Positions 1-2,777 of a stretch of 64,000 nucleotides of DNA are shown here, piece by piece. Origin of the DNA: Piromyces finnis finn (Eukaryota; Fungi; Neocallimastigomycota); NCBI GenBank assembly GCA_002104945.1, contig MCFH01000043.1, positions 1-64,000 of the forward strand, written 5' to 3'. Position numbers and translations under genes: made by a program. Under the pieces are notes generated by a model. That model was given only the letters and a program-made list of their open reading frames with translations. It made no database searches and was not told the origin of the DNA. Every line of letters starts with the position of its first letter. Position 1 is the first letter of the stretch.

Positions 1-2777
1 CTAATGTATATGCATGAATTAGAAATTAAAGAGGTAATTAATTAAATTTATTATCATTTTCCTTATTATATAAACAATATGTATAATAATCACATTAACT
101 ACTATATTATTATATTATTATATTACTATATTATTATATTACTATATTATTATTATTATTATTATTAATATTATTAATATTATTATTATTAATATTATTA
201 TTATTATTATTATTATTATTAATATTATTATTATTATTATTATTATTATTATTATTATTATTATTATTATTATTATTAATATTATTAATATTATTATTAT
301 TATTATTATTATTATTATTATTATTATTATTATTATTATTATTATTATTATTATTATTATTATTATTATTATTATTATTATTATTATTATTATTATTATT
401 ATTATTATTATTATTATTATTATTATTATTATTATTATTATTATTATTATTATTATTATTATTATTATTATTATTATTATTATTATTATTATTATTATTA
501 TTATTATTATTATTATTATTATTACTATATTTAAGATTTACAATAAAGATCCATGTTATAAATTAGCATGGTGCTTTGATGCTTCATTACAATACCAAAC
601 TTTAAGAATAAAGGTTAACTATTTATTTAATTTTATAAAGCTAAATACAGTTTATATTGGTTTTATTAATTTTAGTATATTTTATAAAAAAAAAAATAGG
701 AAGCAAGACTTTTCTTTGATGGTGTTAAAAGTAAAGACCCAAGTTATGCGTAAGATTCAATAAAATATATAAGAATTAATTTATATGTATATATTTAAAA
801 TATAAAATTATATTAATGATTTATTAAATATAACTTATTTTATTATTTTTTTTAAAAAAATAAAAAAAAAAAAAGTGATATTTCAATGATTATTGCTAAT
901 CCTTATAATTGTAATATGTTAGCTGATCAAATATTTTTAAAATTAAAGGAATTATCGGTTTCTAAAAAACCAATTACTGTAAGTTTTTGTTTATGGTATA
1001 ATACGATAATCAAAATATATATATATATATATATTTAATAATTTAATTTTCTATAATATAGGATGATGAAGATTTAATTTGGATGACAAATATTTTAAAT
1101 CTAGGATTTACCTCAAGAACCATGATTCAAAAAAATAATTTTAAGGTTCAAAAATTTGATAAAGATATCACTGAAATATTTTATCCAGCAATTATCAATA
1201 TGATTGCTGAAAATGAAGCAAAAGAAAACATAAAAGAAAAAGATGATAAAGTTAAATCACCAACTGAATCAGATTCTTCCAATAAGAAAACAGCTCAATC
1301 AGAATATCTTACAGATGATGTTATTAGTGTTATTCAAAAATCAGATATTGCTTTGAAAGTATTTATATTTTATCTTTTTAATTGTCTTGAAAATATAGAT
1401 GCTAATGCTTTAGGAAGTGCCCTTAAAGTTGTTAAGAATAATCATGAAAAATTTGGTGATGACTTTTTACAAACTTTTTCATCAATTTTATCTAAAATCA
1501 TTGCTGTAAGTATTTATTTTAATTTATCAGTTGTGATTCATATAGTAACCTTTTCATTAAATATCTCTATTTCTATTTAATTTATTAGGAACAAAATTAT
1601 TTATTTGCCTCATCTTCACAATTTAAAACTGTAGTAATTGACAAATTTTTAACGACTTCAGTAGATTTATCATCTTCACTTCATGAACTTGCATTAAAAA
1701 TTGTAATGGAATTAATGCGTGCTGGCGCTATATGGGATAAATTCACTGCCTGGATAGATAAAATATTTACTACAGGAAAAATAGATGATGAGGTATATTT
1801 TTTTTTTTTTTTTCTATGTTTTTGTATCTGATTTTTTTTTTTTTTTTTTTATTCATATACTTTATATTTTATAGTTTCATCTTTATATATATAATATGTA
1901 TTAACCTTTTTTTTTTTTTCTTTCTTTATTATTATTATTATTATTATTTTTATTTTTATTTTTATTTTTATTTTTATTTTTATTTTTATTTCGTTTACTT
2001 TTTTTTTTTTTATTTATTATTATTATTAAATCGATTAAAAAAAAAAAAAAAAAGGAAAAATTTCAAAGATTATATAAGGAGATTTATGATTTTGGTACTT
2101 CACAAAGTAAAGATTTAGTTATTGAAAGATTCTCATGGCATTATGCTCCAAATATGTTAAAATTCCTTGATATTGATGTACCTCCAACACCACCACCAGC
2201 TCCAATAACACCATCACCATCAATTATGCAGCCTTCACCTAATACATTAACTGGTAATATGATGCCATGGAATAATATGAGGCCACCAGTAGAAGCAGGC
2301 AATATGAATCCAATGATGAATAATTCAATGAATCCAATGAACTCTATAAATCCTATGATTCAAATGGGAATGCAACCAGGAATGAACTCTAATATGAATC
2401 CAGGAATAAATCAAATTCAAATGAATCCAATGAATTCAATGAATCCAATGATAAATAATAATATGAATGGACCTAATGGAATGAATATGATGAACAATAT
2501 GAATAAAATGGGAGGCTATAATCGTTATGGTTATAATAATCATAATTCAGGCTATAGACCACGTGGTGGCAAATATCGCAATAATCGCTCATATACTCCA
2601 CATTATAATAATAATAATAATTATTATAATAATAATGGACCAGGTAAAAGATCTTATAACGATATGGATCCTGGTTTTAATCATTATAATAATGATCAAT
2701 CGTATAAAAATCGTAATATGAACAATAATATGAATAATAATAATAATAATAATAGTGAGAACATATATTATGGATAA
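1..2777 (+). CDS. NELFB: Negative elongation factor B (NELF-B/COBRA1) homologue, 5'-truncated by the window edge, with a C-terminal N/M/G/Y-rich prion-like extension
   Basis: Exons <1-33, 536-613, 700-749, 876-978, 1062-1505, 1589-1792, 2055-2777; all introns GT-AG; 1635 nt in one frame. The product LMYMHELEIKEIYNKDPCYKLAWCFDASLQ..FFDGVK..DISMIIANPY..LIWMTNILNLG..FYPAIINMIAEN..FGDDFLQ is collinear with human NELF-B as recalled (LMSLHDLDVGEICTVDPCHKFTWCLDAC..FLDGVK..DLSMILCDPF..LLLLLRLLALG..FLPMLMSFLVDD..FGDIFLH). Confidence 0.85.
101..525. repeat. (ATT)n microsatellite, ~420 bp, in an intron of the NELF-B gene
   Basis: Near-pure TAT/ATT run with a few ACT/AAT variants at the 5' end, inside the intron 34-535. 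Confidence 0.98.

What the first reader, a model, noticed from the sequence alone, without database searches (positions are those of the whole stretch)
1..2200. NELF-B/COBRA1 homologue in an anaerobic gut fungus: possible NELF-type Pol II pausing in early-diverging fungi
The ORF track shows only unremarkable fragments, but splicing seven exons yields a protein that tracks human NELF-B motif by motif over ~300 aa (DPCYKLAWCFDA vs DPCHKFTWCLDA; FFDGVK vs FLDGVK; DISMIIANPY vs DLSMILCDPF; FGDDFL vs FGDIFL). Established: NELF mediates promoter-proximal pausing in metazoans, is absent from budding and fission yeast, and subunits have been reported in some protists such as Dictyostelium. Inference: this fungal lineage retains at least part of NELF and may have a pausing system that is uncharacterised in fungi. 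Homologues may already sit unnoticed in databases.
Basis: partly seen in the sequence, partly recalled or inferred. Interest (0 to 1): 0.8.

Follow-up and report, generated by a model that had tools for sequence, protein, structure and literature searches.

The report
NELF-B gene of a gut fungus

Summary
Confirmed and already known. Window 1-2777 (+) holds the 3' two thirds of a seven-exon gene cut off by the window start. All six introns are GT..AG and the frame stays open to TAA at 2775-2777.

- **Family match:** searched one exon at a time, three exons hit only Pfam COBRA1/NELF-B, in profile order. Exon 5 alone gives E 3.9e-12, 46 bits against a 22-bit cut-off.
- **Human NELF-B:** two exons find only human NELF-B chains in the PDB, at residues 256-272 and 334-465.
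- **Expression and splicing:** intron-less contigs from four public runs (three studies) carry the spliced form. Three of the five junctions laid were reported outright and two follow from contig coordinates.
- **Prior knowledge:** Chivu et al. 2024 (PMC11482795) report NELF-B and NELF-C/D as widespread in eukaryotes and lost in yeasts. Their NELF-B candidate file holds Piromyces finnis P003029, which reads residue for residue like these seven exon translations. It also holds Anaeromyces, Neocallimastix and 11 other non-Dikarya fungal entries.

Small additions: the public model is 5'-truncated, and the lineage has a conserved N/M/P-rich C-terminal tail of about 195 aa. Pausing in these fungi is untested. 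This scan also noted NELF-A-like and NELF-E-like genes elsewhere in the genome; I did not check them.

The parts
1..33 (+). Exon a, partial: the window starts inside it (11 codons, LMYMHELEIKE).
   Evidence: Translation. GT donor at 34-35. The public P. finnis model starts at the Met at 4-6. Transcript contig X1 carries 850 letters before window position 536, of which only 33 lie in the window.
34..535 (+). Intron 1, 502 nt, almost wholly a (TAT/ATT)n microsatellite.
   Evidence: GTAATT...TTTAAG borders and 2.8% G+C. TRF finds an array at 105-528 with 143 copies.
536..613 (+). Exon b, 26 codons, carrying the DPCYKLAWCFDA motif.
   Evidence: Pfam COBRA1 E 3.9e-4, profile positions 148-171. Only NELF-B chains are hit in the PDB, at human residues 256-272. 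The junction 613>700 is seen in 4 runs.
700..749 (+). Exon c, 50 nt, ending in phase 2 (FFDGVK motif).
   Evidence: Translation. Contig pieces 698-749 then 883-978 leave exactly 7 record letters between them, equal to window 876-882, so the junction is 749>876.
876..978 (+). Exon d, 103 nt (DISMIIANPY motif).
   Evidence: Pfam COBRA1 E 0.053, profile positions 194-221. The junction 978>1062 (GT..AG) is seen in 4 runs.
1062..1505 (+). Exon e, 148 codons: the end of the COBRA1 domain, including a K/E/S-rich insert and FGDDFL.
   Evidence: Pfam COBRA1 E 3.9e-12, 46.3 bits (cut-off 22), profile positions 228-345 of 348. PDB hits are NELF-B only, human residues 334-465. The junction 1505>1589 is seen in 4 runs.
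1589..1792 (+). Exon f, 68 codons, C-terminal helical region beyond the Pfam model.
   Evidence: Translation. It has no family or NELF-B hit on its own. It is conserved in the Anaeromyces and Neocallimastix orthologues. The contig pieces leave 19 record letters, equal to 1788-1792 plus 2055-2068, so the junction is 1792>2055.
2055..2777 (+). Last exon, 240 codons plus TAA. The first 45 or so residues are structured; residues from about 46 (window 2190-2774) form an N/M/P-rich low-complexity tail.
   Evidence: Translation. Tail composition is N 30%, M 14%, P 12%, G 9%, Y 7%. Short motifs near its end (GYNRY, GYRPR, KRSYNDMDP, YKNRN) recur in the Anaeromyces and Neocallimastix orthologues. Contigs were laid to 2593; the rest was skipped by the tool as repeat.

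Best explanation
Window 1-2777 (+) is the 3' two thirds of the single-copy-looking NELF-B (COBRA1) gene of an anaerobic gut fungus. The protein is identical to the public Piromyces finnis model P003029. By homology, the protein is the helical-repeat scaffold of the NELF core. It would bind NELF-C/D, for which candidates are listed in sister genera, and as a core complex sit on early-elongating Pol II with DSIF to slow its escape from the promoter. That would be the weak 'proto-pause' linked to B + C/D-only species, rather than the focused metazoan pause (inferred, not tested). The gene and its family assignment are already in the public record.
For: Exon-by-exon Pfam scans hit only COBRA1, in profile order: 148-171, 194-221 and 228-345. 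Exon 5 alone scores above the curated cut-off. Exons b and e find only NELF-B chains among 177,635 PDB sequences, at colinear human positions 256-272 and 334-465. All introns are GT..AG, very AT-rich, and keep the frame. Intron-less contigs of 4 runs from 3 studies, 99-100% identical, join the exons at my coordinates. Chivu et al. file 92 holds a P. finnis protein that reads identically to the seven translations, plus Anaeromyces and Neocallimastix orthologues that run uninterrupted through all six junctions. N. californiae scores COBRA1 193.8 bits, E 4.3e-57, in their Pfam table. NELF-C/D candidates from N. californiae and A. robustus are in their file 99. The contig is fungal: a GH6 enzyme with two CBM10 fungal dockerins lies at 55905-57305.
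Against: Single-piece E-values against human NELF-B are weak (0.12-0.3). The N-terminal part of the COBRA1 domain (profile positions 1-147) lies outside the window. Exon f and the last exon show no detectable similarity to anything when searched alone. The single-sequence structure model of exon e is unusable (pLDDT 44). Nothing here shows complex formation, Pol II binding or pausing. A pausing-independent cytoplasmic role of NELF-B has been reported in mammals (PMC10591015, abstract).
Confidence: 0.93

Rival explanations
1. It is a true NELF-B orthologue, but in this lineage it does not work in promoter-proximal pausing. It might act alone or with other partners, for example in a cytoplasmic or signalling role, or as a relic scaffold.
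For: A pausing-independent essential role of cytoplasmic NELFB is reported in mammalian cells (PMC10591015, abstract). The lineage has added a long conserved low-complexity tail that human NELF-B lacks. NELF-E was found only in metazoans by Chivu et al..
Against: NELF-C/D candidates co-occur in the same fungal lineage. Chivu et al. find higher pausing indexes in species with the B + C/D core than in species with no NELF.
Confidence: 0.2
2. The COBRA1 resemblance is a chance or generic helical-repeat (HEAT/ARM) similarity, and the protein belongs to another family.
For: Piecewise phmmer E-values against human NELF-B are only 0.12-0.3. Exon f weakly touches RRN3 (E 0.5).
Against: Three separate exons hit the same one of 24,736 Pfam families in colinear order, one at E 3.9e-12. 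No other PDB protein appears for exons b and e. Full-length orthologues score 193.8 bits on COBRA1.
Confidence: 0.01
3. It is a decayed or silent gene copy (pseudogene), or a contaminant from the host animal or a rumen protist.
For: The window holds only part of the gene. The region is extremely AT-rich, with microsatellites inside introns.
Against: The frame is open across 544 codons with canonical splice sites. Spliced transcripts occur in 4 runs of one organism. Orthologues exist in three cultured gut-fungus genera. A fungal-dockerin cellulase lies on the same contig.
Confidence: 0.01

Closest known systems
Piromyces finnis P003029 (EukProt EP00844), listed as a NELF-B candidate in Chivu et al. 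2024, supplementary file NELFB/FinalNELFBcandidates_renamed.fasta
   Same: It reads identically to the seven exon translations of the window, from the Met at window 4-6 to the terminal ...NIYYG. It is the same gene.
   Different: The public model starts at MYMHELEIKE, where the window begins, so it lacks the N-terminal part. Transcript contig X1 carries 817 further letters upstream of the window. Sister-genus models have about 184-198 more residues there.
Anaeromyces robustus P010928 and Neocallimastix californiae P012851 NELF-B candidates (same file)
   Same: Same architecture, including the N/M/P-rich tail and its terminal motifs. They are collinear through all six junctions. By direct reading, exon b matches A. 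robustus at 24 of 26 residues and exon d at 32 of 34.
   Different: They are other genera, with scattered substitutions and length changes in the K/E-rich insert and the tail.
Human NELF-B / COBRA1 (PDB 6GML chain V, 7YCX, 8UHG and others; Pfam PF06209)
   Same: The COBRA1 domain is collinear over human residues 256-465, with shared motifs DPC.K..WC.DA and FGD.FL. The distance from FGD.FL to the end of the structured part is similar: about 117 aa in human against about 123 aa here, counted.
   Different: Pairwise similarity is low. There is a lineage-specific insert in exon e and a low-complexity C-terminal tail of about 195 aa that is absent from the 580-aa human protein. The partners NELF-A and NELF-E were not examined here.
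NELF-B of other non-Dikarya fungi (Rhizophagus, Rhizopus, Phycomyces, Dimargaris, Piptocephalis, Syncephalis, Lobosporangium, Endogone, Basidiobolus, Zancudomyces, Coemansia) and of Amoebozoa such as dictyostelids
   Same: Same family. These show that NELF-B survives in several early-diverging fungal phyla and was lost in Dikarya yeasts.
   Different: As read, these proteins end soon after the helical domain and lack the gut-fungus N/M/P-rich tail.

Membership tests
NELF-B / COBRA1 (Pfam PF06209) | Match to the COBRA1 profile above Pfam's gathering score | tested here: met
   Exon e alone scores 46.3 bits against a cut-off of 22, E 3.9e-12. Exons b and d add 20 and 13 bits.
NELF-B / COBRA1 (Pfam PF06209) | Pieces match the profile in the same order as they lie in the gene | tested here: met
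   Profile positions 148-171, 194-221 and 228-345 for exons b, d and e. Human residues 256-272 then 334-465.
NELF-B / COBRA1 (Pfam PF06209) | Reciprocal search returns NELF-B rather than another helical-repeat protein | tested here: met
   For exons b and e, the only PDB sequences found at E up to 10 are six NELF-B constructs. This was piecewise only; the whole-protein reciprocal search was left out (joined step).
NELF-B / COBRA1 (Pfam PF06209) | N-terminal half of the domain (profile positions 1-147, the NELF-C-facing region) | not testable with these tools
   It lies upstream of the window. Transcript contigs extend 817 letters further 5', and sister-genus proteins have this part.
NELF-B / COBRA1 (Pfam PF06209) | All-helical HEAT-like repeat fold | tested here: inconclusive
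   The single-sequence AlphaFold2 model of exon e is all-helical but has mean pLDDT 44.4 and pTM 0.26. It is too poor to compare, so no fold search was run.
NELF core complex (NELF-B + NELF-C/D) | A NELF-C/D (TH1) gene in the same genome | not testable with these tools
   Only this window is readable. Chivu et al. list NELF-C/D candidates for N. californiae (ORY21278.1) and A. robustus. Their NELF-C/D file showed no Piromyces entry in my term count.
Four-subunit metazoan-type NELF | NELF-A with an HDAg-like Pol II-binding domain, and NELF-E with an RRM | not tested
   Chivu et al. find the HDAg domain only in animals and Capsaspora, and NELF-E only in metazoans. Earlier notes of this scan report NELF-A-like and NELF-E-like genes elsewhere in this genome; I did not check them.
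NELF (functional definition) | Binds Pol II-DSIF and causes promoter-proximal pausing | not testable with these tools
   This needs PRO-seq/NET-seq, ChIP or biochemistry in a gut fungus.

The most novel reading that the evidence does not exclude
Anaerobic gut fungi might run a working NELF-dependent pause built differently from the animal one. It would use a B + C/D core, perhaps with the diverged NELF-A-like protein noted elsewhere in this genome. The lineage-specific, conserved C-terminal tail of NELF-B contains Arg, Tyr and Gly. That tail might serve as the flexible RNA- or Pol II-contacting arm that NELF-E and the NELF-A 'tentacle' provide in animals.
Probability: 0.1. Interest if true: 0.6.

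Novelty: already known. Interest (0 to 1): 0.15.

Why it matters
NELF was long taught as an animal invention missing from fungi. It is now known to be ancient, with its B and C/D core kept in many protists and in early-diverging fungi and lost in the yeasts. This gene is one documented instance of that pattern. What remains open is whether a fungus that kept the core actually pauses Pol II. Gut fungi, Mucorales and Zoopagomycota would let that be tested inside the fungal kingdom, next to NELF-less yeasts. The practical gain from this window is small. It confirms the gene model with transcript evidence, shows that the public P. finnis protein is 5'-truncated, and points to a conserved lineage-specific tail.

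Tried and rejected
- **Exon f and the last exon searched alone:** neither Pfam nor the PDB gave a NELF-B hit. The RRN3 match at E 0.5 is taken as chance. The Pfam model ends at about human residue 465, so this is not evidence against homology.
- **Exon d against the PDB:** no hit.
- **Literature searches:** 'negative elongation factor' + Neocallimastigomycota and NELF + chytrid found nothing. A search requiring at least 2 of 6 terms (NELF plus early-diverging-fungi terms) listed no paper containing NELF among its top 15. The knowledge sits in the supplement of one paper.
- **Large protein searches not used:** I did not run the search for homologous proteins or the search of protein representatives.
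- **Rejected readings:** pseudogene, contaminant and generic HEAT-repeat readings were considered and rejected (see rivals).

Full report
**What is in the sequence**

The window is extremely AT-rich, with 0-18% G+C between coding pieces and 21-36% within them. On the + strand, seven in-frame pieces can be read:
- 1-33
- 536-613
- 700-749
- 876-978
- 1062-1505
- 1589-1792
- 2055-2777

Each gap between pieces begins with GT and ends with AG. The phases (0,0,2,0,0,0) keep one frame open for 544 codons, up to TAA at 2775-2777. The window starts inside the first piece, so the 5' part of the gene is missing. The finding's end coordinate of 2200 falls short of the stop by about 580 bases. Intron 1 (34-535) is almost entirely a (TAT/ATT)n microsatellite of about 143 units. 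The minus strand of 1-3000 has no ORF longer than 53 aa.

**Family assignment, exon by exon**

Each was searched by reference.

Against Pfam:

| Exon | Window | COBRA1 (PF06209) result | Profile positions |
|---|---|---|---|
| b | 536-613 | E 3.9e-4 | 148-171 |
| d | 877-978 | E 0.053 | 194-221 |
| e | 1062-1505 | E 3.9e-12, 46.3 bits (cut-off 22) | 228-345 of 348 |

So three separate pieces hit the same one of 24,736 families, in the order in which they lie in the gene.

Against all PDB sequences, exon e finds only six NELF-B constructs (human residues 334-465, E about 0.25-0.3). Exon b finds the same six and nothing else (residues 256-272, E about 0.12).
- DPCYKLAWCFDA against DPCHKFTWCLDA
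- FGDDFL against FGDIFL

Exon d found no PDB chain. Exon c (16 codons) is too short for the tools. Exon f and the last exon find nothing relevant on their own. This is unsurprising, because the Pfam model stops at about human residue 465. A single-sequence AlphaFold2 model of exon e is all-helical but far too uncertain to use (pLDDT 44.4).

**Transcription and splicing**

Four public runs of one organism, from three studies, hold 56-65% of the sampled words of 536-2800. That is about the exon share of the stretch. Laid on the stretch, each run gives a contig 99-100% identical to the window that lacks the introns.
- **Reported outright, in all four runs:** joints 613>700 (listed as 611>698, 'cut +2', GT..AG), 978>1062 and 1505>1589.
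- **Inferred from contig coordinates:** the other two junctions fall in stretches the tool masked as repeats. Seven record letters lie between the pieces ending at 749 and starting at 883, which equals window 876-882. Nineteen lie between 1787 and 2069, which equals 1788-1792 plus 2055-2068. So 749>876 and 1792>2055 fit exactly.
- **Not laid:** intron 1, and the last 184 bases of the coding sequence.

The runs are only guessed to be RNA by the tool. But intron-less copies of an intron-bearing gene in four small data sets are what transcript assemblies look like. Contig X1 (2450 letters) has 850 letters before window position 536, of which only 33 are in the window. So the mRNA continues about 817 letters upstream of the window.

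**Already in the record**

Chivu et al. 2024 (bioRxiv, PMC11482795) searched eukaryotes for pausing factors. [quoted passage not shown] They also report that species with only this core show higher pausing indexes than species with no NELF.

Their supplementary file of final NELF-B candidates holds 14 fungal entries, all outside Dikarya:
- Rhizophagus, Rhizopus, Phycomyces, Lobosporangium, Endogone
- Dimargaris, Piptocephalis, Syncephalis, Coemansia, Zancudomyces, Basidiobolus
- Anaeromyces robustus, Neocallimastix californiae, Piromyces finnis

The P. finnis entry (P003029) reads, residue for residue, like the seven translations of this window, from the Met at window 4-6 to the last residue. 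The window is therefore from that species or a near-identical strain, and the finding is this very database entry.

The Anaeromyces and Neocallimastix proteins run without gaps through all six junctions. This independently supports the model, including the intron 1 junction. In the authors' Pfam table the Neocallimastix protein scores 193.8 bits (E 4.3e-57) on COBRA1. Their NELF-C/D candidate file lists proteins from N. californiae and A. robustus. My term count found no Piromyces entry in that file, which may reflect an incomplete gene set rather than absence.

The part of their Table S1 that I read lists only the species with nascent-RNA data, and the main text names only the two yeasts among fungi. 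So no NELF-bearing fungus seems to have been assayed. Text searches for NELF together with Neocallimastigomycota or chytrid found nothing. A looser search pairing NELF with early-diverging-fungi terms listed no NELF paper among its top results.

**What this look adds**

1. The public P. finnis model is a 5'-truncated fragment. It begins where this window begins, sister-genus proteins have about 184-198 more residues there, and the transcript contigs extend further.
2. The last exon encodes a tail of about 195 residues beyond the helical domain, made of 30% Asn, 14% Met, 12% Pro, 9% Gly and 7% Tyr. Asn-rich runs are common in such AT-rich genomes. However, short motifs near the end of the tail (GYNRY, GYRPR, KRSYNDMDP, YKNRN, a terminal YY) recur in all three gut-fungus genera. 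They are absent from the other fungal NELF-B candidates as read. That suggests constraint, but its role is unknown.

**How it most likely works**

- **Shown:** an intact, expressed NELF-B orthologue.
- **Inferred from the family (Vos et al. 2016, PMC4940160; Chivu et al.):** a HEAT-like scaffold that binds NELF-C/D. As a core complex it would ride on early-elongating Pol II with DSIF and slow promoter escape, giving at most the broad 'proto-pause' seen in unicellular species with B + C/D.
- **Not shown here:** complex formation, Pol II binding or pausing.

The main rival is that the protein has a pausing-independent role, as reported for cytoplasmic NELFB in mammals (PMC10591015, abstract).

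**Context**

The contig is fungal. A GH6 cellulase with two CBM10 fungal dockerins lies at 55905-57305, which is typical of anaerobic gut fungi.

Earlier notes of this scan report NELF-A-like genes (s1-190344, followed up as real but very diverged; s1-176634) and a NELF-E candidate (s1-183695) elsewhere in this genome. I did not test them, and they do not count as evidence here.

**Verdict**

This is a known family member that is already catalogued. The open question of pausing in NELF-bearing fungi is real, but it does not arise from this finding.

Noticed in passing
window 105-528: Intron 1 of the NELF-B gene is almost entirely a (TAT/ATT)n microsatellite of about 143 units, with a longest pure run of 234 nt. 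It may be why the assembly and gene model break just upstream.
   Followed up: partly
window 1-33 and upstream: The public P. finnis NELF-B model starts at the Met at window 4-6. Transcript contigs carry about 817 more letters 5' of the window, so the deposited protein is a truncated fragment.
   Followed up: partly
window 2190-2774: NELF-B carries an N/M/P-rich C-terminal tail of about 195 aa. Short conserved Arg/Tyr/Gly-containing motifs recur in three gut-fungus genera and are absent from the other fungal NELF-B candidates I read.
   Followed up: partly
window 1190 and 1218: Run X2 differs from the window at two exon e positions: A>T (synonymous Ala) and G>A (Ala>Thr in the K/E-rich insert). 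This is probably strain variation.
   Followed up: no
window 4078-4656 (-): An ORF with three Nab2-type CCCH zinc fingers (E 2.8e-20) lies in a local G+C island of about 0.4.
   Followed up: no
window 26111-29395 (+): C2, MUN and C2 domain pieces lie in successive ORFs. This is probably one multi-exon Munc13/CAPS-like exocytosis gene.
   Followed up: no
window 55905-57305 (-): A single-ORF GH6 cellulase carries two CBM10 fungal dockerins (E 3.6e-71 and 4.1e-29). It is a cellulosome component that marks the genome as an anaerobic gut fungus.
   Followed up: no
window 59410-63879 (-): An uninterrupted 1490-aa ORF of a Ty3/gypsy chromovirus (zinc knuckle, protease, RT, RNase H, integrase, chromodomain). 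It is a fungal retrotransposon that looks intact.
   Followed up: no
window 31961-35281 and 36172-41046 (+): Two very long ORFs (1107 and 1625 aa) have no Pfam match at E 0.001.
   Followed up: no
window 11645-12658 (+); 52954-53649 (+): An ORF with an RGS domain, and an ORF with FYVE plus UIM motifs (Vps27/Hrs-like).
   Followed up: no
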